A stretch of 64,000 nt of DNA. Source: Phaeosaccion multiseriatum (lineage: Eukaryota > Protista > Ochrophyta, other classes). Under the pieces are notes generated by a model that saw nothing but the letters and a program-made list of their open reading frames with translations, did not search any database and was not told the DNA's origin. Shown piece after piece: positions 1,075 through 54,008 of this stretch (within the stretch, counting starts at the first letter, position 1; each line of letters starts with the position of its first letter). The DNA lies in NCBI GenBank assembly GCA_965112735.1, contig OZ218957.1, positions 1,240,001 to 1,304,000 on the forward strand, read 5' to 3'. Position numbers and translations under genes: made by a program.

Positions 1075-4000
1075 ATGGAGGAGCAGATCTCCTTTGAGGC
1101 CGTTCCGGGCTCCAGTCTGTTGGAGACCGAGTTGTTTAACGACGATGCTTTGCTCAGGCTCTTTGCTTTCAGCGGAGGAGGCGCAGACGACTTTGTTGGG
1201 TGGGCACAGAACCTTGGCCAGAAGGTCGAAGTGGAGGTGGTTCGCGTCCGGATACCGGCTCCAGCAGCGGAAGCTGGGCAGGTGCTCGATGGTGTCATCA
1301 AGGACTTGCTCGCGTGCATGAGCAGCTGTCCTTTTTCTTTTTGGGGGCACGGCGAAGAGGGTGCCCACATGGCGCTTGTCGTGGCTGGGGAGCTGCAGGC
1401 TCGGGGGTTGCCGCTCCCTCAGAGACTGATCACGAGCTTTGCAAAGCCCAAGGGGTGTGGCGCTGAACTCGCACCCTTGGCGTGCCCATTGGTTGTCTTT
1501 GGGCTGCAGGAGGATGTCGTGTCAATGCAGGCGTGGGTGGATCAGACTCGCTCTGAGTTTGTGGTGTTGCCCGTCGCTGGTATTACGGAGGACACCATTG
1601 ATGAGGTTCTCAAGATCACGCCCGGTGCCGAGAACCCCTTGCTGGGGCACATGGCGTCTTTGATGGCATCCGACTCGAAAAATAGTCGCGAAGAAAGTGC
1701 CTCTCTCATCGACGCATGGAATTCCTCTAGCATGGCTTATCCGGAGAATGCCTGCCTACAGGATATGTTCCGCGACTCTCTGTCGGGACTGAAGGACCCG
1801 AATGCAACCGCGATATGGGCGGAATCCCGAAAACTGTCGTATGCAGAGGTTGACGCCCTAACAGACCAGTTGGCCAATTGGTTTTATGCTCAAGGTGTCC
1901 GCGTGGGTAGCGTCGTGGGAGTCTTTATGAATCGCAACGCGGAGTACGCACTCTCCGTTTTGGGAGTGTTAAAGGCTGGTGGAGCCTACATGCCTATTGA
2001 AACAGTTTTGCCCGTGGATCTCCTGCGCAGTGTGTTGGAGGAGGTGAAGCCTGTGGTCGTTGTGACGCAAAGCAACCTTCGGACTCGCTTGCCCTTGACC
2101 CAAGCGTGCTTGCTCATGGATGCTACTCCTCCTTCTACTCTGGGGGAAGGAGAATCGTGGCAAGAAAGAGTGGCCTGTGCCCCGGCCCTTCCTCTCTCGC
2201 GAGAGATGCCAACACCGGACTCGCAGGCATATGTCGTCATGTCCTCCGGGACCACTGGAACGCCAAAGGGGATCTGCTGCCCTCACAGAGGGGCTGTACA
2301 CTCGTACTACTACCGCTTGCTCGAGTACCCCTACGAAGAGGACGACAGGGAGGCCTGCAACGTGTTTTTCGTGTGGGAAATGCTTCGCCCCCTTTTGGGA
2401 GGTACCAAGGGAGCGGGAGGCGCCACGCCTGCCCTCTACGTCATCCCGGACGATCACATTTACAATCCCGTCAAGCTAGTGGAATTTCTTGGCAAACATC
2501 GCATCACCAGAATGCTTTTCACCCCAAGTCTCTTGCAGCTAGTCTTGAGCAGCTGCAGCGTCGACCAACTGAAGCAAGGAATGAAGAGCATGAGGATTGT
2601 GTGGCTCTGTGGAGAGGTGGTCAGCATCGATCTTTGCACTCAATTTTGCAAGATTCTTCCGGGATGTCAGCTCGTCAATCTCTACAGCATCAGCGAGTGC
2701 CACGACATTGGATACGCCGATCTCACGTCGGTCGACACGAGGGAGTCTCCCAAGTTTGCGCCATGCGGGAAAGTGATTCCGAATGTGACGGCGTACATTG
2801 TGGACGACAACATGCGTCAGGTAAGCTCCCCACCGGCACACACAGACACGCATATATCTCCTGTGAGAAAGCCCCTAACAGCGCAAACTGCGCTCCCATA
2901 CGTAGGTGCCCGTGGGCGTTCCGGGACGCATGTTCATAGGTGGTCCTTGTCTTGCCTTGGGCTATCTGAACATGCCAGTCAAGACGGCGGAGAGGTTCGT
3001 GGCATGCCCCTTCGTTCCAGCTATTGGCGGTTCGCAGCCCCTCATGTATGACACTGGAGACCGATGCCGGTTCCTGCCAAGCGGGAGCATAGAGGTGGGC
3101 ATCTTTGTGCGCAGACAAACTCGCTCTCTCTTCCCCCCCCTTTTATCTCTCACGCCCTTTTCTTGTCTCGTGTGTATCGTGCTCGCCTAGGTGCTGGGGA
3201 GGTGCGACTTCATGGTGAAGATTCGCGGATATTCGGTGGTCATTGGGGCTGTCGAGACGGCCATTGCGGACCACCCACTCGTCTCTACGGCGTGCGTGCT
3301 GACAGAGGTGAGTTTCCCCCCTTCTCAAATCGGAGTCCAGCAGCCTCAACTGGTTTGTAACGCGCACCACGCACGACGTACATTAGGGCGAGGAGGGCTC
3401 CATGACAAAGAGACTGGTGGCCTACGTCGTGCCGGCCGATTGGGAGCGTCTCCCCTCGGTGCAGAGCATCCAGATCTTCATCAAGACCAAGCTGCCGCCG
3501 TACGCGGTCCCAAGTGTGTTCATCTTGCTGGACGCTATTCCAATCAACATGGCGTCTGGGAAGCTGGACCGCCGGAAGCTTCCAAATTCGGAGAGTGGCA
3601 CAGCGAGAAGGCTTGACGGGGACTGGGCGGGGGATGCAGGTGGTGGAGGAGCGGGGGTTAACTCCGCTGCTGCTCCTGCCGGCGATGAGCCGACTTCGTG
3701 TGATCCCCCGAGCTCAGCCACCGAGAAACGGGTGTCCGAGATCTGGGCTGCCCTTCTTGACATGAGAGTGGCCACAATCGAGCGCAGCCACGACTTCTTT
3801 GACCTCGGGGGACACTCTCTGTTGCTCATCAAGTGCTGCGAAGCGATTGAAAAGGCCTGGAAGGAGGAGCAGGAAGTCGACATCTCTGTCTCCATCGAAG
3901 ACATCCTTTCCCGGCCAACTTTGGCTGACCTCGCCGCCCACATCGACCAGGTGGCGGGCACAGGGGATGGGACGTTCATCCCCCCAGATGGACCGGTTCG

Positions 4001-5597
4001 CCGCCCACGAAGCGCCAGCAAGTAAGATGTCGTGTTGGAACGGGCTTTCTGGCACGGCGCTATCTAACCCTGTTGCTGCTGCTGCTGCTCCCTTTCTTCT
4101 CTCTGTGCGTGACAACAGCACGGCCTCCGACGTGCCCATGACGAGTGGCGCAGACACTGTGGACATTGCAGCCGAAGCCGCTCGCCTTGATCAGTCCATT
4201 TTCCCCGCTCCGACTAGGAAACAGGGCTATGCGCGACTGAGGAGTGCTGACTTCCACAGACCGCCCTTCAGGGTGCTCCTGACGGGCGCTACGGGATACC
4301 TTGGAGTCCACCTGCTCTCTGCCCTCCTTACCGACAGTGAGGCGGAGGTTTTCTGCCTGGTGCGAGCGGCAGATGAGCACGCAGCAATGTTGAGAGTGGA
4401 GAGCGCATTGAGCGAGTTCGGCTTGCTCGGCGCGGGGAGTGCAGAGGACGGGGAAGACAGCGGCGGTCTGCAGCCGGATCACCTGGCGCGAATAGTGCCT
4501 ATTCCCGGCGATCTCTCTCGGCCATTACTTGGCATGACAGATGGAGACTTCAAGCAGCTGGCAGGAGAATTGGATGCCATCATCCACAACGGCGCGGCCG
4601 TCAACCTCGTGCGGTCGTACACGAGCCTGAAAAAGGTCGGTTTGTTTCGTAGTTCGTTAATTCACCGCTCTTGCCCTCCCCGCGTCCGTCTAATCCTCTT
4701 CTCCCCTCTTGCTGCAGGTGAATGTACTGGGCACACAAGAGGTGCTGCGTCTGGCTGTGACCAATGGGATCAGCACCCGGGTCAAGCCCGTCCACTACGT
4801 CAGCACCAATGGCGTCTTTCCCTTCGCAGACTCGGCGCAGTCCGTCTTTCTCGAGGACGCAAACATGGCCGAGGCGTGGCGTCACCTCCACGACGGTTAC
4901 GGCCAGAGCAAGTGGGTGGCCGAGAGCTTTTGCAGGTTGGTTCGTCCACACGTTTCTTCGCATCGCCGTCTGTGTATTAAAAGTCCTAACCCTTTGTCTA
5001 CTTACAACAACCAGGGATGCGCGAGGGCGAGGTCTTCCCGTTTCGATCTACAGACCCGGCAATATGGCGCCGTCCTCGTCTCAGGGAGCGTGGAACCAAA
5101 GCGACTTCATCTACCTGCTCCTGCGGGGCTGTGTGGAGCTCAAGGCCTTCCCAGACGAGGCGTGGAAGCTGGACATGACGCCTGTGGACTTTGCTGCCCG
5201 CGCAATTGTGGACACGGCCGTCCTCAAGCCCGCCAAGGCGCTTGGGAAGGTGCTCCACGTCCAAAACCCAAAACCCAGCGTGCGATTCTCAGACGTCGTA
5301 CAGTGGCTGGAGGCGTCGCTGCAGGTGACCATGGAGGGCCTTCCCTTGGACGCCTTCAGGGAGCGACTGAGCGCGGCCGTCGATGCCATGGACGTGGAGC
5401 GCCGAGACAGCTCAGCCACAGTTCTGCCGCAGCTCCTTGCTGGAATCGGCAGCTTCGGCCAATACCTGGCCTCCGATGCTAGAATGGATTCGAAAGAGCT
5501 ACATAAGCAGCTCAAGGGGACAGGCATTACGTGCCCTCCAGTCGACGCTGCCCTCATTGCCACCTACGCCAAAGGTCTTTTGCACGAGCCACAATAA
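1075..5597 (+). CDS. NRPS-like reductase: degenerate thioesterase - adenylation - PCP - thioester reductase (TE*-A-T-R), ATRR/glycine-betaine-reductase-like A domain
   Basis: Exons 1075-2820, 2906-3094, 3191-3307, 3387-4021, 4119-4635, 4718-4935, 5015-5597 join in frame at GT-AG sites. Motifs: SSGTTGTPKG (A3), YDTGD (A7), GRCDFMVKIRGY (A8), SGKLDRRKL (A10), DFFDLGGHSLL (PCP Ser), VLLTGATGYLG and GYGQSKWVAE (R domain). Confidence 0.92.
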
Positions 5598-6830: not shown

Positions 6831-8447
6831 TTACGCCGTGTCCGCCTCCTCCTCCTCCTCCCCTTCCTCCCTCGTCTCTGCCTCCAGCTTGGCTGCTGCC
6901 GCAATGAGCGCTTCCTGCTCCACGGCAGGGTGGAAGGGAGGGGAGGGAGGGAAGGAAGGACGCGCGTAAGGGGCAAAGCGCACTGAAACGAACAAGCTTC
7001 TCTGACTCACCTTCTTTGCCTGCCTCTCTCTCTCTTTAAACTCCGCCCTGTCTGCCTTTGCTTCTTCACATTTTAAGGAAGATAGCACCACGGCACCACC
7101 AACAAGAGAGTCCACTCCTCTTCGGCACTCGGCAACTTGCGACACGGCGTCTCCGACCTTCCCCATAAGCCACGGGAGAAACACCTGCCCAATCTCTCGC
7201 TGCAGGGGGTCGAAAAAGGTGCCATCCTCCTGCGTGGACAAATAAATACACGGGGTGGGGGCATGCAGACGTGTAAGGTGAAAAGCCGCTGCAAGGATAA
7301 AAAGGTGGCCGCACACACCTCCATATCGTCAAACACGTCAGTGGCGAGTGATGCCAGGTAGTTGTGAGCGAAAGACCTCGCCGCAACCTTTTCCAGCAGC
7401 GCTTCTCGAGCCTTTCGGGCCTCCTGCAAGAAAGTAAGCAGCGGAAGGGGGGAGTATTAGTTGCGCGGGGTGCAGAGAGGACAAGCAAGAGTGCTGGCTG
7501 ACCGACCTGTTGCTGCCTCAGTCTCCGTTGCTTCTCGGCGAACTTCCTCTTGGCCTCTGCCTCGACTCTCTGCACTTCTGCCAGCTCCGCATTCCTCTGC
7601 TGGTTGAAGAGCTCCTGCCTCGACCGAATGGCAGCGAGCTCCTCTTCTTCGCACACCTCGAGCACGGAGAGCTCCACAGTCTTGCCCACGAGCACCTCCA
7701 GGATGGGCTCCACCTCGAGATCAAAGTCAAAGAGCTCACCCACTTCCACCTTTGGCACGGCAAGATGCAATTCAAACGAAAGGAGCTCTGCTGTAGAGGA
7801 GGAACTATGGGGGGGGGAGCAGCAGGCGGCTTCTTCTAACCTGTGTATTGGCGTCAACCCCAGTCTTGGTAGGTATGAACATGGGACTAGGCGGTCGATC
7901 TAGGAAAGCATCCGTCTGCGTCTCCATCTCCGCCTCCAGCGGTCGGTCCATGAGCTCCTCTAGGAAGTCGTCCGTCTGAACTTGCAGGTGCACCCTCCCA
8001 TTCACTGCGGGTGGAGTCCGTGGCATCATGGACAGCTCGGCCTCCTGCACGACAGGCGGGGAATTGGTCCAAAACCTTTAATTAGTACGCCACATGCCCG
8101 AGCCGAGATATACGAGCGACGTGAGGATGAGAGTCAAGTACTTGACCGACCTTTCTGCGCCGAAGAGCTTCCTTCCTCAGCGCTTGCTCGTGCTCGGCTC
8201 TCAGGCGCTCCGCCTCTCGAGCAGCGCTTTGTGTAACCACTTGTGCTGCAAACGTATTGCCCCTGATCACCCTTCTGTCGAACATGATGTTGTTGCCGTC
8301 CGATACGCTGTCCTCATCTCCGTACTGCTCTCTGTACTTTGGCTTCTGCATTCGCTTGCTGGGGACTGCCTGCGGCTCTGCAGAGTACACGAAGGCAGTC
8401 TGGGACTCTGCCCCGCCCCGCCCATTTTCTCTCGTGCTGCCCACCAT
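6831..8447 (-). CDS. RSPH3: Radial spoke protein 3 (flagellar)
   Basis: 'NIMFDRRVIRGNTFAAQV', 'QTDDFLEELMDRP...ETQTDAFLDRPPSPMFIPTKTGVDANTQ', 'ELFDFDLEVEPILEVLVGKTVELSVLEVCEEEEL', 'GTFFDPLQREI'; multi-exon. Confidence 0.93.
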
Positions 8448-12846: not shown

Positions 12847-14471
12847 ATGGAGCGAGAAGATGGTTGGAATAAAGCTCCTGCCTCGCTAATTACAACTGTG
12901 TCCATTCGCCATAGGCCTCATCCAACCACGGTTCGAAAAACGGATGCTCCGATCCAGGTGGGTGGTGTTTTGCGCTGTGTGGATTGCTCGACCCTCGCCT
13001 CGTAAGTAAGCCGGGTGATTGATGCTTTTATGGATTGGCCACCACTCTACGCCTTTGCCAACCCCTCCCGAGGGGGGTTTGCTCTGTGGGTTGACCATTT
13101 ATGGAACCGCTTTTGTGTTCTCTCTCCCCCCTCTGCCTGTCGCCTTTGCCTCTCGCCTTTGCCCCCTCCCGTTCCGGCCCCTTTAAGGTTTCGCAGGGGG
13201 AGGATGGCGGCGTGCAGATTACGCAGCGGAAGCTGTGCTTGGTTTGCTCCAGGGCCGTTGCACCGTACGTGTGCCCCCGGTGTCGAGTGAGCTACTGCTC
13301 ATCGGCGTGCTACAAGCAGCACGGAGCGGCTTGTACCGAGGCCTTTTACAAGGCAAAGGTGGAGCAAGAGGTTGGGTGGGAGTCGAAAGATGACCACGAT
13401 AGGAACAAGATGCGCTCGCAAATGTCGGCCGTTTTGGATAGGGTAAAGGCGAGTCGGGAGCACGCAGCCGCCCCGCTGTCTCCACCACCTGACGCAAATT
13501 GCCAAGCAGAGACACTTGTCTCACGCATCGCTGCTGCTTTGTATGATGGAGGGGAAGAGGGGGACGTGGATTCCGTGCTTACTGAGCTCACTGCGGAGGA
13601 CCAGCGCCTGCTCGAACGTGTCTTGTCCTCTGGGGGCGGACAAGTTGCCAAGCTCATCAAGCCGTGGCGGCCGTGGTGGGAGAACAAGGGCGGGCTCGCC
13701 ATCGAGGAGGTTCACAGCAGGAGCAGCAGCAGCTCCGTAGGTCCCGTGGAGGCAGAAGGAGAGGCAGAGGGAGCCGGGGTGGAGTCCTGGATGGAGTCCT
13801 GCTGCGGCCTTCACTCCCTTGAGCATCTGAGACAAGAAACGACTTGCGAAAGCCTCCAGTCATTTCGAAGCCTAGCTGGTGCTCGGGAGCCGTCTCGGCT
13901 TGCTGCGCTTTGTCTGGTGGATTTTACTGCTGCTTACGCGTACACTTTGCGGAGATATAATGGCTGTTGGTGCCACGATGTGATGGAGGCTGCGAGTCTC
14001 TTTGTATCGCTCTCCCCTGCTCTCTACAGAGATGCGCGGTACCAGAGCGTTGGCCAAGCGATGAGAGAGAGCAGCTGTGCTATACAGTCCTCCATGTCGA
14101 TAGGCATGAGCTTCCCCGCTTCCCTGTGGAGTGATGTGCATGCCATCATGCTGGACTGTTGCCTGACTGCGTGTGCCCTGGCTGACGGACTAGCATTGGT
14201 CACCGCGGCTGCGGCTCTAACACTGCCCCCCGAACACGAGAAAGGAGGTGGCAAAGACACCCCCAAGACGACGAAAAAGGCCCAGCGAAAAAGGAAAGGG
14301 CAGAAGAGAGCATGGAAGCAGCTGGAGGCACATCGGCGAAAGCTCGAGTTTTTTATGTTGTGGGTGCAACAAGGGGAGGGCAGCAACACGACTGCCTCGG
14401 AGCTGGTAGCAGAAGCGGCGGAGCAAGTGCGAGAAAGTTTTGTCTTGGACTCTTGCCAACTCAAGCTATAG
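12847..14471 (+). CDS. ZNHIT2: Zinc finger HIT domain protein (ZNHIT2-like)
   Basis: CLVC...YVCPRCRVSYCSSACYKQH...CTEAFY HIT finger, 'KPWRPWW', 'AYAYTLRRYNG', 'KLEFFMLW'. Probable first exon 12847-12957 splices in phase 0 to 13188; start uncertain. Confidence 0.8.
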
Positions 14472-19621: not shown

Positions 19622-21181
19622 ATGCCTTCGACCGGGGCCTTGTATGCCCTCGCTCTCGCAGTTCGGCTTTGCTTTGTGGCATGGGGCCATTGGCAAGACA
19701 CGCATTTTGCACACCTCCTGCCTTACACGGATGTGGACTACCATGTGTTCAACGACGCCGCGGGTCATGTCCTGGCCGGGGAGTCTCCGTACTTACGACC
19801 GACGTACCGTTACCCTCCTTTACTTGCCTGGCTTCTCGTTCCAAACTTCTTGCTCCACCCTTGCTTTGGCAAGGTGCTGTTCAGTGTGGCGGACGTGTGG
19901 GTTGGGAGGCTGATTGAGGTCATTTTGAGGATGGGCATTCGCTCTGGAGAGAAGACGACGGCGGTGTCTCCCATGTTCTGCGCCAAACTCTGGCTGTTCA
20001 ATCCACTGGCCGTGAACATTTGTACTCGAGGTAGTGCGGATGCTGTGTCCATGGTGCTCATCCTTCTCGCGCTGTATGGAGCCATGGCTCGCAGGGACTG
20101 CTTGGCAGCAGCGGCCTTTGGAGGAGCGGTGCATCTGCGTGTGTATCCCATCATTTACGGCACTGGCTTTGTTGTATGGTTGGGCACCAGGCAGCAAGTG
20201 CGTCGAAGGGCCAATATGGTGTGGGCGCTGCTTCGGAGTCGGTACGTGTGCTGGTTCGTAGCCCCCAATCCATTTCGCCTCACACACACTCTCTCAACCC
20301 AAACAGGCGGATGTGGCTGTTTTCCCTATCCAGTGCCGCCGTCTTTGGGGCTCTTACAGCTGGTTGTCACTGGCTCTACCCTGGCCCCGCGGGCTTTTTC
20401 CAGAATGCGCTGCGGTATCACGTGGGTCGAACGGATCACAGGCACAATTTCTCTCTCTACTGGTACACGCTGTATCAGAATTTTGGCCAACCAGCCTCCA
20501 GGACGGGAGGTCTGCTGGCTTTCGTACCGCAGGTGGGTGCACATGCTCGTATATTCGTTGTTGTTTGCTGCTTCAACAGCCAAAACCGCGGGCCCCGAAA
20601 CACAATGCAGGTGGTGCTGCTCATCGCCTCGGCGCTGCGCTTCGGAAGGGTGGACTTGAGCTTCTGCTTGTTCCTGCAGACCATGCTCTTCGTCATGCAT
20701 AACAAGGTGAGAGATGGTGACCTGGCTACTGTGCCGAAACTGAAACTCCCCATTAAGCGATGCCACCCTACTCGCTCAGGTGTGCACTGGGCAGTACTTC
20801 GTGTGGTACCTCAGCCTCTTGCCGCTGGTTGCGTCGCGTCTCCGACCACCCTTCACTCCGCTGCTGAGTGCGAGTATCATGTGGCTCCTCACTTTGGGTC
20901 TGTGGCTCTTCTTTGCGCATCGCCTAGAGATGCAGGGGCGAGGCGTATTCTTGCAGGTCCGCCCCCCACCTCCCCCTGTCGTCCTGCCGGGATGCCAGCA
21001 CACGCGGGGCCTCACTGATAACACAAGCGCCCTCCCCTCCTCCCCGCAGGTGCATCTGTCCGGCATAGCCTTCTACGTGGCCAACTTGGGCGTGCTGGCA
21101 GCGGTCCTTCGAAACAGAGGCGTTTGTGTTGGCCTTTCGCTGTCCAAAGACCCAGAGAGACCGAGAGCCGTAGAGAGTTAG
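19622..21181 (+). CDS. PIGM: GPI mannosyltransferase I
   Basis: 'YTDVDYHVFNDAA', 'SPYLRPTYRYPPLLAWLL', 'WLFNP...ICTRGSAD', 'YHVGRTDHRHNFSLYWY', 'FVMHNKVCTGQYFVWY'. Confidence 0.93.
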
Positions 21182-44247: not shown

Positions 44248-46063
44248 TTACAAGTATTCCACAGACGCGGAGAGCCTTAGCGAGAGCAAGATGCTCTGTA
44301 CAGCACCCCTCAGCTTCCGCCTGGCGTTAAACAGCTGCAGATTCTTGAGATTCTTGTCGAGACTATTCTTGGCCAGGTCCGCGTCCTGGCTACCGAGCAT
44401 CCACGGGTGGATCACGGCCTCCGCCGCGGTGATCCTCTTGCTTGGATCTACCGTGAGGAGGCGACTGATGAGGTCCTTGGCCTCCTTGCTGACTGCATCC
44501 CAATACTCCGCATGGAACTCGAAGGTGCCCGTCTTGATCTTGCGAAACAAACGCGTCTGGTCCTCGTCGTGAAAGGGTGGATACCCCCCCAGAAGGATGT
44601 ACATTATCACTCCCACACTCCACATGTCCACCGAGGCTCCGTAAGGCTCCCCCTTGACAATCTCGGGAGCGACATACCCCGGAGTACCGCACTGTGTTTT
44701 CAGCAAGCCGTTGGTGAGGCTGCGAGCAAAGCCAAAGTCCGCCAGCTTAATATTTGAATTGTCTCCGTCGCTGGCCAGCAAAAGGTTTTCGGGCTTGAGG
44801 TCCCGGTGCACAATGTTTTTATCGTGGCAGTACTTTACAGAGCTCAAGAGGATGGCACAAAGGTTCCTCGCTTCCTGGAGGGGCGCGGGGCGGGGGGGGG
44901 GGGAGGGCGTGCGTCAGCAAACCCCCCCGATAAATGATGCGCGCTCTGTCTCTCTCGGGGCCCCATTCGCTCCCCTCTCCCATCCCCTCCCTCCCCTTAC
45001 GGACCTTCTCATTGTAGCACTCCTGCTTGACGATGCGGTCGAAGAGCTCCCCTCCCTTCATGAACTCCTCAACCACGTAGATGTAATCGTCGTTGTCCTT
45101 GTAGATCTGGTACACACTGATGATGTTGGGGTGATGAAGCGAGCGCAGAATGGCCACCTCTGCGGAACATTTATCGTACAAAGCATTCCACGGCAGTGGT
45201 TGCACGGCAGTGGGGGGTGGAAAAGAGCGAGAGTCACGGGAGGGGGGGGGGGGAGACCGGGGAGGGGAAAACAAAAAAAGAGAGAGGTAGAGACGGAGAC
45301 GCATGGAGAGGCAGATGTAGAGCAAGAGAAGAGGGAAAGAGGGAGAACGAGAGAGGGAAGTGCAGAGTGAGGGACAGTGACAAAAAAGGGGATCGATCGA
45401 GAGAGGAAGAGAGGGAGACGCATAGAGAGGCAGATGTAATGGACGTGAAGAGAGAGGAGAGGGAAGCGCAGAGAGAGAGCGGCAAAAGAGCTGACAGAGA
45501 CAGAAGAGAACGAGACGTTCGAGCCATTTCTTACCTGTAAAGAGGTCCGCTTCATCTTCCTTCGGCAAACCGTCCCGCTTCATACACTTGACCGCGTACT
45601 CTTGGCCTGACAGAGAGAGCAACAGCACAGATTTGCTCAGGACCCTTCCACTCTCGGTGGTCTTTCGGGAAAGCCCCCTCCCCCCCCTATAAGGCCACAA
45701 CACACCAGAGCGGTACCTACCTGACTTTTTGTACACTCCTTTCCGCACGACGGAGTAGCCCCCCTTCCCCAGCTCATCTTCCAAGCGAAAATGCTTTTCA
45801 AAGGATGAGCCCACAAAGTTTGGAAATGGCATCGAAGGGTCTTCAGATGCCCCCGGCTGCCCCCCCGGCCCTTCTGCTTCTGGCGTCAGCTCGTCCCCTC
45901 CGAGCATTGCTTCCTGAGAGCGAGAGATATGGACGAGGGGAGTGGCGAGAAAAGACAAAAATGATGAGACAAAATGGCGGCTCATCCTGGGGCTCCCCCT
46001 CTCTACATGCCATCCTGCTTGCTCAACAAACCAGGGCAGGATGCTTACCAGGCAGGACCCCAT
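44248..46063 (-). CDS. Ca2+/calmodulin-dependent protein kinase (CaMK1-like) with N-terminal MGSC acylation motif
   Basis: ELGKGGYSVV, YAVKCM, GGELFDRIV, HRDLKPENLLL, DFGFA, CGTPGYVAPE, DMWSVG, CaM-binding 'FNARRKLRGAV'; 15-nt first exon 46063-46049. Confidence 0.92.
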
Positions 46064-46831
46064 CGTTGAGCCTCCTCTCCTCCTCTTTGACCTCTTCGAA
46101 ACGCACAAGGCGAGGGGTGCGTGCCAAGCACACAGCGCTCTGCAGCTGCGCGTGTGAGAGGCCCAGCGTATTTTTACTTTTAGGAAGGGATGGCAGTGGA
46201 CGGCGCCATTCCGATTTCTTCCTCCCCTAAAATTGACCCCTGACGCACTTGTGGAGATGCTTGGTATGTTCGAATCCGGATTGCCGCCATTTAGGGAATG
46301 CGCGCCTCATATGAACGGTTTGTCGAAATACACGCACGGAGAGAGGATACGATCCCTGTTCCTGTTCGTTATCTGGGGTGTGTGGCTGGTCCCACATCTT
46401 GGGGGGGTGGTTCAACTATCGCCGGCGTTAGCGGATTGCAAATAGCGTCAGGGGTCGACTAAAAAATCTTAAAACGGGAGAGTTCTCCCGAGGCACTCCC
46501 GTTTCCCCTCTCTTCAGCACACTAAGCTCCACATGCTTCTTAGGAGGGAAGAGGGAAGCACTCCCATGAGCGTATTCAGCGTATCGACAGCTCTCGCCTT
46601 GGACGGAACTTTTTTTTTTTTTTTTTTTTTTTCCTCCCCTCCTTTTTTCTGTCACGTGGTACATGTACATTTGGACAAATTAATTATAAGAGCTATGAAA
46701 AGCTGTATCATCCATCACCGAACCCTTCATCAGAGGGCAGGTGGACAAGAAAACAAAAAAAACACCTCTTGCCAGTCCTCCTCTCCCTCCCCCAGCAGCA
46801 GAAACAAGCAGGCGTACTAGGGTCTTGTCGT

Positions 46832-51817: not shown

Positions 51818-53801
51818 GTGTGTGTATCTGTCTGTCTCTTTGTGTGCAGGGCCTCCGAGGGAGCATCAACGTCCTATGCCGCATTCGCCCCCCCACCAAG
51901 GGGGAGGTAGAGGCCCAGGCCAAAGTGGCGGTGGAGGCGCTGGGGATGAATGAGGTGAGACTTGCTTGTCTGAGGAGCAAGCAGAGCACACATCGCAAAC
52001 ACCCACGCACAAATCTCACGCTTCACACGCCCCCTTGCACATGCACGGTTCGGCACGGCAGGTGGGTATCTGGGACAAGCATGCCAAGAAGTGGAAGAGT
52101 CTGGTGATGGACAGAGTGTTGGGTCCCGAAGCCCAACAGAGAGACGTGTTTGCCGAGCTGGAGCCTCTGGCGTTGTCGGCAGTGGACTGTCACAGCGCAT
52201 GCATCCTCGCCTACGGGCAGACGGGCAGCGGTAAGTCGGTGAACAAGTGTGTGTAAGGTGAAAGAGGGGTTCACTGCTGAATCAAAGCGCCCCTTCCCCC
52301 TTCCCCTCCCTGTATGAGAGTAGGCAAAACGTACACCATGATGGGTCGGTCCGTGAGCGGGCAGTACGGCATCTCGTACAGGGTGCTCCACAAGCTGTTT
52401 GATGTGTTGAACCTCAAGGCAGCCGAGCAGGCGTACGCGAGTGCGCAGGGCCAGGCGGAGCAATGGCACACATATACAGTGAGGGTGGCGATGATGGAGA
52501 TTTACAACGAGGAGGTGAGGGACCTGCTCGTGCCGAGTGCTAGTACGGGGGGCAACAACAACAACAACAACAACAACAGCAGTAGCAGTAGCAAGAAGCT
52601 GGACATTCGCAAGGGCAACCACGGCATGATGGAAGTGCCCGGCCTGAGCTTCGAGCAGGTCAACGGCTTGCAGGACGTGATGCGGGTGCTGCAGAGGGGG
52701 AGCGACTCGAGAGCAGTGGCCAAGACAGATGTGCACGACGACTCGTCCCGCAGCCATTCCATACTCATGGTGGAGGTGGTGAGAACCACGACACAGATAA
52801 AGAACGCAGCTGAGGCGGGAGGTGCTGGTGCAGGGCAAGGGGAAGAAGGGGGTGAAACAGAGGAGGAAACGGGGCGGCTCTTCCTGGTAGACCTTGCCGG
52901 GTCGGAACGGGTCAAAAAGTCCGGTGTGACTGGTGCCGAGCTGAAAGAAGCTACGCACATAAACACTTCACTGTCGGCGCTGGGGGATGTGATGCAAGCC
53001 CTCGACAGCAAGGCCAAGCACATTCCCTATCGGAATTCAAAGCTCACCTATCTGCTGCAGGACGCGCTGGGCGGGGGCGCTTGTGCGCGAACGGCAATGG
53101 TGGTGACTGTGTGCCCCACCGAGCTGACCTTGGAGGAGAGTACCTTTACGCTGCAGTTCGCCAACAGGGTACGGCACATTGAGTTGGGCAAGGGGGCACA
53201 GCGCAACGTGCAGGACAAGAATTTGGCCGAGGAAGTACAGCGCCTCAAGGCCTTGGCGAGGGAGGTGGCAAGGGAAAAGGAGGTGGCGGAGAGCGGGTTG
53301 GTGAGCTTACAGCGAGAGCACAAGCGCAGTCAAGCCAAGATGAGCTCTCTACTCGACACGCGGAGTAGGAGCGTGCAGGAGCTGCGCAAAACCACGGAGG
53401 GGGAGCGGGCCTCTCTGCGAGCACAGCTGGAGGACGCACAGAGCAAGCTCGTGGCGGAGAGGCAGGGAAAGAGCAAGGTATTGGGCGACAGAGAGGAGAT
53501 GAGTCGGCAGATTAGCAGACTCACACTCAAACTGGAGGTAGCCGACCGTACGAGGGAGGAGGGGCGGCAACGGGTAGCCGAGAAGGACTCAGAGATATCC
53601 CAGCTTCGGGCGGAGTTGCGGGCCACACGCGCCGAGGTCAGGGACGTCAAGAGATCGACTTCGTCTCCGGCGAAGCGGCCTTTGCTCAGCAAGAAGGGGC
53701 CGCCACAGCACCAGCAGCTGCAGGGGAGTAGGCTGAGGCCGGGGGGGAGGATCGGAGGAGGGTTGCCCAGCACCACGAGCGAGGGTGTGGGGGGCGGCCA
53801 G

Positions 53802-53832
<31 letters not shown>

Positions 53833-54008
53833 GAGGAGGAGCAGGAGGAGCAGGTGCAGGAGTAGGGGGGACGGGAGGGACGATACGGAGGCCGTCGGCG
53901 AGTCAGGTGCGGCCGCCCTCTGCAGGGGAGCGGAGACAAGCGGCACTGGACAGGCACCACGAGAGAATGCGGAAGATCCACGAAGCTCGAGCGGACAGGG
54001 AAAAATGA
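49512..54008 (+). CDS. Kinesin-14-type motor with N-terminal NudE/NDEL1-like coiled-coil domain
   Basis: In-frame exons 49512-49568, 49773-49894, 49989-50815, 50926-51024, 51193-51714, 51850-51954, ~52062-52230, ~52324-54008. Neck 'LRGSINVLCRIRP', P-loop AYGQTGSGKTYTM, SSRSH, LVDLAGSER, HIPYRNSKLTYLLQDALGG. Confidence 0.9.

What the first reader, a model, noticed from the sequence alone, without database searches (positions are those of the whole stretch)
1075..5597. ATRR-like NRPS reductase with one R domain: candidate betaine or DMSP-type osmolyte reductase in an alga
Seen: at the A4 position the A domain has 'DREACNVFFVWEMLRPL' with no amino-binding Asp (canonical FDxS), followed by 'VIPDDHIYNP', 'WLCGEVV' and 'NLYSISECHDI'; then PCP and a single thioester reductase. 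Known (recalled): fungal glycine-betaine reductase ATRR (A-T-R1-R2) has the near-identical 'ACNVFFIWEILRPL' aromatic pocket for a quaternary ammonium and reduces betaine to choline through the aldehyde. Inference: without R2 this enzyme should stop at the aldehyde or need a separate partner. In an alga the substrate could be glycine betaine or a sulfonium analogue (DMSP, dimethylsulfonioacetate), which would be an undescribed osmolyte-recycling route.
Basis: partly seen in the sequence, partly recalled or inferred. Interest (0 to 1): 0.82.

Follow-up and report, generated by a model that had tools for sequence, protein, structure and literature searches.

The report
Betaine-type reductase gene with dead thioesterase
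This is an intact seven-exon algal gene for a single-module enzyme that most likely activates glycine betaine and reduces it to its aldehyde. It belongs to a little-studied family also found in oomycetes, not to the fungal two-reductase enzyme it was compared with.

Summary
Window 1075-5597 (+) is one intact seven-exon gene (GT-AG introns of 79-97 nt) encoding 1,334 aa, and every quoted motif is present. The adenylation domain lacks the amino-binding Asp (V430). It carries the residues published for the fungal glycine betaine reductase ATRR: F431/F432/W434 match F201/F202/W204, W510 matches W270, and D544 stands where ATRR has E304. A carrier domain (Ser828) and one thioester reductase (Y1129/K1133) follow, with no second reductase.

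In trees the gene is not an ATRR that lost R2. It sits in a separate TE-A-T-R clade with ochrophyte algae (Chrysoparadoxa, Discosporangium), sister to oomycetes. That four-domain layout was noted in 2015 as an unusual NRPS of unknown function. The nearest bacterial relatives are TE-A-T loading modules of polyketide synthases.

The most likely function, inferred and not shown, is ATP/NADPH-dependent reduction of glycine betaine to betaine aldehyde, with a separate enzyme needed to reach choline. Nothing supports the DMSP idea. No RNA data were available, and I could not fetch a fungal ATRR sequence. Moderate interest.

The parts
1075..2820 (+). Exon 1 (aa 1-582): start ATG, thioesterase-like domain and most of the adenylation core
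   Evidence: Continuous ORF. The N-terminus aligns with Discosporangium and P0275 from the first residues. The junction is collinear with homologues.
2906..3094 (+). Exon 2 (aa 583-645), A domain including YDTGD (A7)
   Evidence: GT-AG intron of 85 nt; collinear junctions.
3191..3307 (+). Exon 3 (aa 646-684), A8 motif GRCDFMVKIRGY
3387..4021 (+). Exon 4 (aa 685-896, phase 2): end of the A domain (A10 Lys743 at 3561-3563) and the carrier domain
   Evidence: Pfam AMP-binding_C and PP-binding. The 3' junction lies in the variable T-R linker, so it is the least certain splice.
4119..4635 (+). Exon 5 (aa 896-1068): linker and first part of the reductase domain
   Evidence: NAD_binding_4 at 2.3e-27. 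Best solved relative is the MxaA reductase, 1.7e-19.
4718..4935 (+). Exon 6 (aa 1069-1141): reductase, catalytic YGQSK
5015..5597 (+). Exon 7 (aa 1141-1334) and stop TAA 5595-5597: C-terminal part of the reductase; nothing follows it
   Evidence: The T-R region aligns end to end with homologues.
1147..1689 (+). Degenerate type II thioesterase-like domain (aa 25-205)
   Evidence: Pfam PF00975. AlphaFold model pLDDT 88, pTM 0.87. Foldseek top hits RedJ, RifR, TesA and human TE2, E about 1e-9. Lid and His motif are absent.
1345..1365 (+). GHGEEGA (aa 91-97) in place of the nucleophile elbow GHSxGA
   Evidence: Oomycete, ichthyosporean and bacterial homologues keep GHSxG...D...GHF. The algal group has lost it. 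The DNA is confirmed by four runs.
1747..3569 (+). Adenylation domain (aa 225-745; spans exons 1-4, so the range includes introns)
   Evidence: Pfam AMP-binding 1.5e-51. Core motifs SSGTTGTPKG, NLYSISE, YDTGD, GRCDFMVKIRGY and GK743 are intact.
2362..2376 (+). Pocket residues V430 F431 F432 V433 W434 (PheA positions 235-239)
   Evidence: Match AnATRR F201/F202/W204 at a constant offset of 230. Canonical NRPS A domains have D at the V430 column.
2602..2610 (+). W510-L-C512 (PheA positions 299-301)
   Evidence: W510 corresponds to AnATRR W270 by spacing, once the extra residues 444-452 are allowed for. It is W throughout the TE-A-T-R clade.
2704..2709 (+). D544-I545 (PheA positions 330-331), the anionic pocket residue
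   Evidence: It lies 34 residues after W510, as E304 lies 34 after W270 in AnATRR. It is Asp in almost every family member.
3717..3929 (+). Carrier (T/PCP) domain, with phosphopantetheine Ser828 at 3816-3818 (FFDLGGHSLLL)
   Evidence: Pfam PP-binding 4.5e-11; coordinates.
4264..5594 (+). Single thioester reductase domain (aa 945-1334; range includes two introns): TGATGYLG at 4282-4305, Y1129..K1133 at 4898-4912

Best explanation
The gene encodes a 1,334-aa single-module NRPS-like carboxylate reductase. Its domain order is dead thioesterase, adenylation, carrier, thioester reductase. It is the algal orthologue of the TE-A-T-Red protein of oomycetes.

Shown here: the gene is intact, and all catalytic motifs of the A, T and R domains are present. 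The thioesterase-like domain has lost its Ser, its lid and its His. The A-domain pocket lacks the amino-binding Asp and carries the aromatic cage plus acidic residue described for fungal glycine betaine reductase.

Inferred: the A domain adenylates glycine betaine, or a very similar small quaternary-ammonium carboxylate, and loads it on Ser828 as a thioester. The R domain then uses NADPH to release betaine aldehyde. A separate aldehyde reductase elsewhere in the genome would be needed to reach choline. The N-terminal domain is then only a structural remnant in this alga.
For: Gene model and motifs. Domains.

Pocket: the residues equal the published AnATRR F201, F202, W204 and W270, with Asp at the E304 position.

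Phylogeny: the A domain lies in one superfamily (100% SH-aLRT apart from canonical NRPS A domains). That superfamily includes animal proteins that NCBI names glycine betaine reductase ATRR, the Meloidogyne ATRR family and diatom PtNRPS1 homologues. The pocket is nearly invariant across the superfamily.

Reductase: in AnATRR, R1 stops strictly at the aldehyde and an R2-dead enzyme accumulates betaine aldehyde. In three contigs, bacterial A-T-R relatives have a free SDR gene directly downstream. In another lineage they have an APH-type kinase plus an SDR nearby, which fits a two-enzyme route to an alcohol that is then phosphorylated.

Thioesterase remnant.
Against: There is no biochemistry for any TE-A-T-R protein.

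The only characterised algal superfamily member, diatom PtNRPS1, has the same NVFFVW motif. It was nevertheless reported to bind salicylates and to reduce tryptophan to tryptophanol. A pocket-based substrate call is therefore not safe.

The acidic pocket residue is Asp here, not Glu.

I could not fetch a fungal ATRR sequence, so the residue matching rests on published numbers and spacing.

The closest solved reductase is MxaA. From my own knowledge, not checked here, MxaA is a four-electron reductase. Direct alcohol formation is therefore not excluded.

No RNA run holds the gene, so expression is unproven. No partner reductase or betaine/choline gene lies in the window.
Confidence: 0.55

Rival explanations
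1. The enzyme has the same chemistry but a different physiological substrate. Candidates are another onium carboxylate (dimethylsulfonioacetate, DMSP, beta-alanine betaine, gamma-butyrobetaine) or an aromatic acid or amino acid, as claimed for diatom PtNRPS1.
For: AnATRR reduces sulfobetaine about tenfold more slowly than glycine betaine, so the cage tolerates a sulfonium. PtNRPS1, with the same A4 motif, is reported to act on tryptophan and salicylates. The acidic residue is Asp rather than Glu, and the clade is distinct from the ATRR clade.
Against: Among natural betaines, AnATRR turned over only glycine betaine. The pocket of this protein matches the consensus of animal ATRR-type proteins, not a special algal version. 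The diatom clade differs at position 299 (T, I or V instead of W), so PtNRPS1 is a poorer guide than ATRR. Nothing in the window points to sulfur metabolism.
Confidence: 0.25
2. The single R domain carries out both reductions (four electrons) and releases choline directly, so no partner enzyme is needed.
For: The best solved relative of the R domain is the MxaA terminal reductase. From my own knowledge, not tested here, MxaA makes an alcohol. No R2 and no neighbouring SDR are present.
Against: The homologous R1 of AnATRR is strictly a two-electron reductase. Bacterial A-T-R relatives keep a separate SDR next door. Sequence alone cannot separate 2e- from 4e- reductases.
Confidence: 0.15
3. It is an alpha-aminoadipate reductase (Lys2) or a generic carboxylic acid reductase, as database names of its oomycete orthologues suggest.
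For: Orthologues are labelled L-aminoadipate-semialdehyde dehydrogenase large subunit in Phytophthora megakarya and Plasmopara. The A-T-R logic is shared.
Against: Orthologues score 348-444 bits on the NCBIfam Lys2 model against a cutoff of 1030, and 161-210 bits on the CAR model against a cutoff of 1300. The amino-binding Asp is absent. The A domain groups with ATRR-like proteins.
Confidence: 0.02
4. The gene is a decaying, non-functional relic, as its dead thioesterase domain might suggest.
For: The TE domain has lost its Ser, lid and His. There is no RNA evidence.
Against: The frame is open across all seven exons, with canonical splice sites and every A, T and R core motif intact. It is 48-52% identical over its full length to orthologues in several lineages. 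The same TE decay is shared with three other algae that keep the rest of the protein, which indicates long-term retention.
Confidence: 0.05

Closest known systems
Fungal glycine betaine reductase ATRR (Aspergillus nidulans; Hai, Huang and Tang 2019, bioRxiv 10.1101/559534)
   Same: It shares the A-T-R core. The A domain has no Asp235 equivalent. The aromatic cage residues F201/F202/W204/W270 match F431/F432/W434/W510. An acidic residue sits at PheA position 330. The thioester reductase has a catalytic Tyr.
   Different: There is no C-terminal R2 (SDR aldehyde reductase). There is an extra N-terminal thioesterase-like domain. Asp replaces Glu304. The gene lies in a different clade from every ATRR-type (A-T-R1-R2) protein I could include. 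The fungal sequence itself was not obtained.
Oomycete TE-A-T-Red NRPS (PhalNRPS_3 of Plasmopara halstedii, PMC4594904; P0297, P0278 and others)
   Same: Same four-domain order, 48% identity over the full length, sister clade in the A-domain tree, and the same pocket residues.
   Different: Oomycete proteins keep the thioesterase Ser-Asp-His triad and lid, which this protein has lost. Function is unknown in both.
TE-A-T-R proteins of ochrophyte algae (Chrysoparadoxa australica P0186, Discosporangium mesarthrocarpum P0001, Tribonema minus P0274)
   Same: These are the nearest relatives: 65% identity in the A domain to P0001, and 51-52% over the full length to P0186 and P0275. They share loss of the thioesterase lid and His.
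   Different: The way the nucleophile was lost differs (GHGEEGA here, GHGFGA, GHELGS; Ser is kept in Discosporangium and Tribonema). This protein has about nine extra Gly-rich residues after the A4 motif.
Diatom PtNRPS1 (A-T-R1-R2; Nat Commun 2026, PMC13194791)
   Same: Same superfamily and the same NVFFVW motif. That paper also notes diatom homologues without R2.
   Different: It belongs to the ATRR-type clade, judged by its Seminavis homologue P0492. It has R2. Position 299 is not Trp. Its reported substrates are tryptophan and salicylates.
Bacterial A-T-R proteins of about 995 aa (Desulfobacterales and others) and bacterial TE-A-T-KS-AT-DH-KR-ACP hybrids (P0272)
   Same: Same pocket motifs. 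The TE-A-T hybrids are the closest bacterial relatives of the TE-A-T part.
   Different: Positions 301 and 322 differ (N and T or D instead of C and L). The hybrids pass the acyl group to a polyketide module instead of a reductase.
Carboxylic acid reductases and Lys2
   Same: Adenylate, thioesterify, then reduce to an aldehyde.
   Different: Different A-domain lineage, with scores far below the family cutoffs.

Membership tests
ATRR glycine betaine reductase (A-T-R1-R2) | A domain without the alpha-amino-binding Asp, and with the aromatic cage F201/W204/W270 plus an anionic residue (E304) | tested here: met
   V430 sits at the Asp column. F431, W434 and W510 are identical to the cage, and D544 is at the E304 position. 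The matching uses published residue numbers and spacing, because no fungal sequence was in hand.
ATRR glycine betaine reductase (A-T-R1-R2) | Carrier domain with a phosphopantetheine Ser, and an R1 thioester reductase with a catalytic Tyr | tested here: met
   Ser828 in FFDLGGHS; TGATGYLG; Y1129/K1133.
ATRR glycine betaine reductase (A-T-R1-R2) | Fused C-terminal R2 short-chain dehydrogenase that reduces betaine aldehyde | tested here: not met
   There is no adh_short hit, and the protein ends with the R domain. ATRR-type relatives all carry PF00106.
ATRR glycine betaine reductase (A-T-R1-R2) | A domain inside the ATRR-type clade | tested here: not met
   ATRR-type proteins of animals, diatoms, labyrinthulids and cryptophytes form one clade (97%). 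The window gene lies in the TE clade (98%). Fungal ATRR was not included.
ATRR glycine betaine reductase (A-T-R1-R2) | Glycine betaine-dependent ATP and NADPH turnover | not testable with these tools
   This needs enzyme assays.
TE-A-T-Red NRPS-like family (oomycete PhalNRPS_3 type) | Domain order thioesterase, adenylation, carrier, reductase in one polypeptide | tested here: met
   architecture described in PMC4594904.
TE-A-T-Red NRPS-like family (oomycete PhalNRPS_3 type) | Grouping with family members in an A-domain tree and collinear full-length alignment | tested here: met
   The eukaryotic TE-A-T-R clade has 98% SH-aLRT support and oomycetes are the sister group. Full-length identity is 48-52%.
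TE-A-T-Red NRPS-like family (oomycete PhalNRPS_3 type) | Catalytically competent thioesterase (GxSxG, Asp, His) | tested here: not met
   The motif is GHGEEGA, with no lid and no GHF motif. Other ochrophyte algae share the loss of lid and His. Chrysoparadoxa P0186 and P0275 have also lost the Ser, whereas Discosporangium and Tribonema keep it. This is a lineage feature rather than grounds for exclusion.
Lys2 alpha-aminoadipate reductase | Score above the NCBIfam TIGR03443 cutoff; amino acid-type A pocket | tested here: not met
   Orthologues P0186 and P0278 score 348 and 444 bits against a cutoff of 1030. Asp235 is absent. The window protein itself could be scanned only in pieces.
Carboxylic acid reductase (CAR) | Score above the NCBIfam NF041592 cutoff | tested here: not met
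   Orthologues score 161 and 210 bits against a cutoff of 1300.

The most novel reading that the evidence does not exclude
The TE-A-T-R family of ochrophyte algae and oomycetes may be a distinct onium-carboxylate reductase. Its physiological substrate would then not be glycine betaine but another osmolyte, such as dimethylsulfonioacetate, DMSP or beta-alanine betaine. That would be an undescribed route turning an algal osmolyte into a reactive aldehyde.
Probability: 0.1. Interest if true: 0.75.

Novelty: new variant of a known kind. Interest (0 to 1): 0.45.

Why it matters
A conserved but uncharacterised four-domain enzyme is shared by brown-alga-related algae, oomycete plant pathogens and an ichthyosporean. 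It now has a concrete and cheap-to-test substrate prediction: glycine betaine reduced to betaine aldehyde.

If the prediction holds, it adds a second, independently built form of the betaine-to-choline route, beside the fungal and animal ATRR. It would help interpret the atrr-like transcripts seen in marine plankton. It would also correct the database names now attached to these proteins (Lys2, linear gramicidin synthase).

The shared decay of the thioesterase in the algal branch, against its retention in oomycetes and bacteria, offers a natural experiment on what that domain does.

Tried and rejected
1. The exhaustive representative search was swamped by giant multi-module NRPSs, whose several A domains sum to higher scores. 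Only one true relative surfaced (P0186).

2. All three word searches failed to return a fungal ATRR. The length window, then the animal and protist hits, filled the lists. The recalled fungal motif therefore stays unverified.

3. Supplementary files of the ATRR and nematode papers hold the alignments only as images, and the PNAS version is not held.

4. The ESM Atlas look-up gave only generic AMP-binding clusters.

5. The run search found only DNA assemblies from one study. Laying them confirmed the sequence but says nothing about expression or splicing.

6. Neighbouring genes give no metabolic clue. In the window they are radial spoke protein 3, zf-HIT, PIG-M, a kinase and a kinesin. The Phytophthora orthologue lies next to a biotin carboxylase. 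The Chrysoparadoxa orthologue has a DAO-family oxidoreductase about 5 kb upstream.

7. The SDR next to bacterial A-T-R genes is only 32% identical to an ATRR R2 and matches generic SDR models, so it is suggestive and no more. The methyltransferases beside the bacterial TE-A-T-PKS gene are generic class I enzymes.

8. Lys2 and CAR membership was rejected on curated cutoffs.

Full report
**1. What is there**

The stretch 1075-5597 on the + strand is a single eukaryotic gene. I read the splice sites from the sequence and assembled them. There are seven exons: 1075-2820, 2906-3094, 3191-3307, 3387-4021, 4119-4635, 4718-4935 and 5015-5597. The six GT-AG introns are 79-97 nt long. The frame is open for 1,334 codons and ends in TAA.

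Five of the six junctions fall in conserved blocks and align with homologues without gaps. The fourth (4021/4119) lies in the variable linker between carrier and reductase, so homology cannot confirm it. Contigs from four DNA runs of one study cover the gene with no differences. The unusual residues described below are therefore not assembly errors. No RNA run holds the gene, so expression and splicing are not confirmed experimentally.

**2. Domains**

- Pfam finds AMP-binding, AMP-binding_C, PP-binding and NAD_binding_4 split over three exons. It finds no short-chain dehydrogenase.
- The core motifs are intact: SSGTTGTPKG, NLYSISE, YDTGD, GRCDFMVKIRGY, Lys743, the carrier Ser828, TGATGYLG and Y1129/K1133.
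In alignment with ordinary NRPS A domains, the conserved Asp of FDxS corresponds to V430.
These match Pfam Thioesterase just above its cutoff.
- A model of these residues has pLDDT 88. It most resembles the type II thioesterases RedJ, RifR, TesA and human TE2.
- Oomycete, ichthyosporean and bacterial homologues keep GHSxG, the Asp and the GHF His motif. This protein instead reads GHGEEGA and lacks both the lid and the His motif. The domain is a catalytically dead remnant.

**3. Relatives**

Word searches and one hit from the exhaustive search give the following relatives:
- Full-length TE-A-T-R proteins of about 1,300 aa in ochrophyte algae (Chrysoparadoxa, Discosporangium, Tribonema).
- The same in many oomycetes (Phytophthora, Peronospora, Bremia, Plasmopara, Pythium, Lagenidium).
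- One from the EukProt entry Nk52, which I take to be an ichthyosporean (from memory, not checked).
- A few unnamed protist sequences.

Identity over the full length is 51-52% to the algal proteins and 48% to Phytophthora.

A third search returned the ATRR-type proteins (A-T-R1-R2, about 1,290 aa). They come from animals, including entries that NCBI names glycine betaine reductase ATRR in Nematostella and Haliotis. They also come from Meloidogyne incognita, Guillardia, Hondaea and the diatom Seminavis.

The A-domain trees have 61 and 75 rows (IQ-TREE, SH-aLRT support). They separate this whole superfamily from canonical NRPS A domains with 100% support and resolve three groups:
- bacterial A-T-R proteins (99%);
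- ATRR-type eukaryotes (97%);
- a TE group (93%), made of bacterial TE-A-T proteins plus eukaryotic TE-A-T-R proteins (98%).

The window gene sits with the ochrophyte algae (99% together with P0317), and oomycetes are the sister group (100%). This pattern fits vertical descent within stramenopiles. It agrees with other agents' notes that the genome is a stramenopile alga. The T-R half follows the same pattern: 46% identity to the TE clade and about 30-32% to the R1 of ATRR-type proteins. The gene is therefore not an ATRR that lost R2. It is a member of a parallel lineage.

One bacterial cousin is a 2,671-aa TE-A-T-KS-AT-DH-KR-ACP hybrid. The TE-A-T unit also serves as a polyketide loading module.

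**4. Pocket**

Hai et al. name F201, W204 and W270 as an aromatic cage and E304 as the nearby anion. The diatom paper adds F202.
- F431, F432 and W434 match F201, F202 and W204 at a constant offset.
- W510 matches W270 once about nine extra residues (444-452) are counted.
- D544 lies 34 residues after W510, just as E304 lies 34 after W270.
- These columns are PheA positions 236, 239, 299 and 330 in the alignment with canonical domains.

The same table shows the pocket is almost invariant over the whole superfamily. W510 is kept in the TE-A-T-R clade, in most animals and in bacterial A-T-R proteins. It is replaced by I, V or T in diatoms and cryptophytes. I never obtained a fungal sequence, so this match rests on published numbering.

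**5. Function**

The following is shown:
- an intact A-T-R machine;
- an onium-type pocket;
- no R2;
- a dead thioesterase.

The following is inferred:
- The enzyme adenylates glycine betaine, forms the thioester on Ser828 and releases betaine aldehyde with NADPH.
- The inference leans on AnATRR. Of the natural betaines tested, only glycine betaine was turned over. R1 stops at the aldehyde. An R2-dead mutant accumulates betaine aldehyde.
- Weak support comes from bacterial gene neighbourhoods. An SDR gene sits directly after the A-T-R gene in three contigs. In another lineage an APH-type kinase, an SDR and methyl-THF:corrinoid methyltransferase genes lie nearby.

Several points count against certainty:
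- Diatom PtNRPS1 has the same A4 motif but is reported to reduce tryptophan.
- The acidic pocket residue is Asp rather than Glu.
- The nearest solved reductase is MxaA. From my own knowledge it makes an alcohol.
- No partner enzyme and no betaine or choline genes lie in the window.
- The DMSP proposal has no specific support. AnATRR accepts sulfobetaine only poorly, and this pocket is the family consensus.

**6. What was known**

- The TE-A-T-Red layout was described in 2015 for Plasmopara halstedii. It was called an unusual NRPS of unknown function, with homologues in Phytophthora.
- R2-less homologues in diatoms were mentioned in 2026.
- atrr-like transcripts from Dinophyceae, stramenopiles and haptophytes were reported in 2022.
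- My literature searches found no paper that links the TE-A-T-R family to the betaine-type pocket, or that notes the thioesterase decay in algae.
- Lys2 and CAR labels on orthologues fail the curated cutoffs.

**7. Verdict**

The gene is a new variant of a known kind. It is an ATRR-like betaine-type reductase in a distinct four-domain lineage, and here its first domain is dead. Interest is moderate, because the substrate prediction is concrete and testable but rests on analogy.

Noticed in passing
L001:4856-12871: A bacterial metagenome gene encodes TE-A-T-KS-AT-DH-KR-ACP (2,671 aa). Its A domain clusters at 90% identity with P0005, which carries the same betaine-type pocket. An FrhB-like oxidoreductase and two class I SAM methyltransferases follow it. 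If the starter is glycine betaine, one malonyl extension with ketoreduction and dehydration would give a carnitine- or crotonobetaine-like skeleton. This is speculation only.
   Followed up: partly
L002:11090-11989; L005:11026-12147 and 12991-13704: Bacterial A-T-R genes of this superfamily are followed directly by a free SDR in three contigs. In another lineage they are followed by an APH-type kinase, with an SDR and methyl-THF:corrinoid methyltransferase plus B12-binding genes nearby. This resembles a split two-step reduction followed by phosphorylation of the alcohol.
   Followed up: partly
window 2404-2430: About nine extra Gly/Ala-rich residues (TKGAGGATP, aa 444-452) lie between the A4 pocket motif and the IPDD motif. 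They are absent from all homologues aligned, and Discosporangium has a shorter insert at the same spot.
   Followed up: no
window 4070-4090: A short (GCT)n run inside intron 4 also matches unrelated contigs in the DNA runs. This explains the loose ends seen there.
   Followed up: no
P0275 and P0313 (relatives): Two TE-A-T-R relatives carry two carrier domains in tandem, by Pfam PP-binding.
   Followed up: no
L008:2671-4778: In Chrysoparadoxa a DAO-family FAD oxidoreductase lies about 5 kb upstream of the orthologue. This Pfam family includes sarcosine and dimethylglycine oxidases. The proximity may be coincidence.
   Followed up: no
window 7066-7857 (-), 13101-14471 (+), 19622-21018 (+), 44819-46108 (-), 52314-54008 (+): Exons of neighbouring genes encode radial spoke protein 3 (so the organism has a flagellate stage), a zf-HIT protein, PIG-M mannosyltransferase, a protein kinase and a kinesin motor. 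None is related to betaine or choline metabolism.
   Followed up: partly
database annotations of orthologues (P0002, P0278, P0286, P0297): Oomycete orthologues are named L-aminoadipate-semialdehyde dehydrogenase large subunit or linear gramicidin synthase subunit D. Both names look wrong, given the family cutoffs and the pocket.
   Followed up: yes
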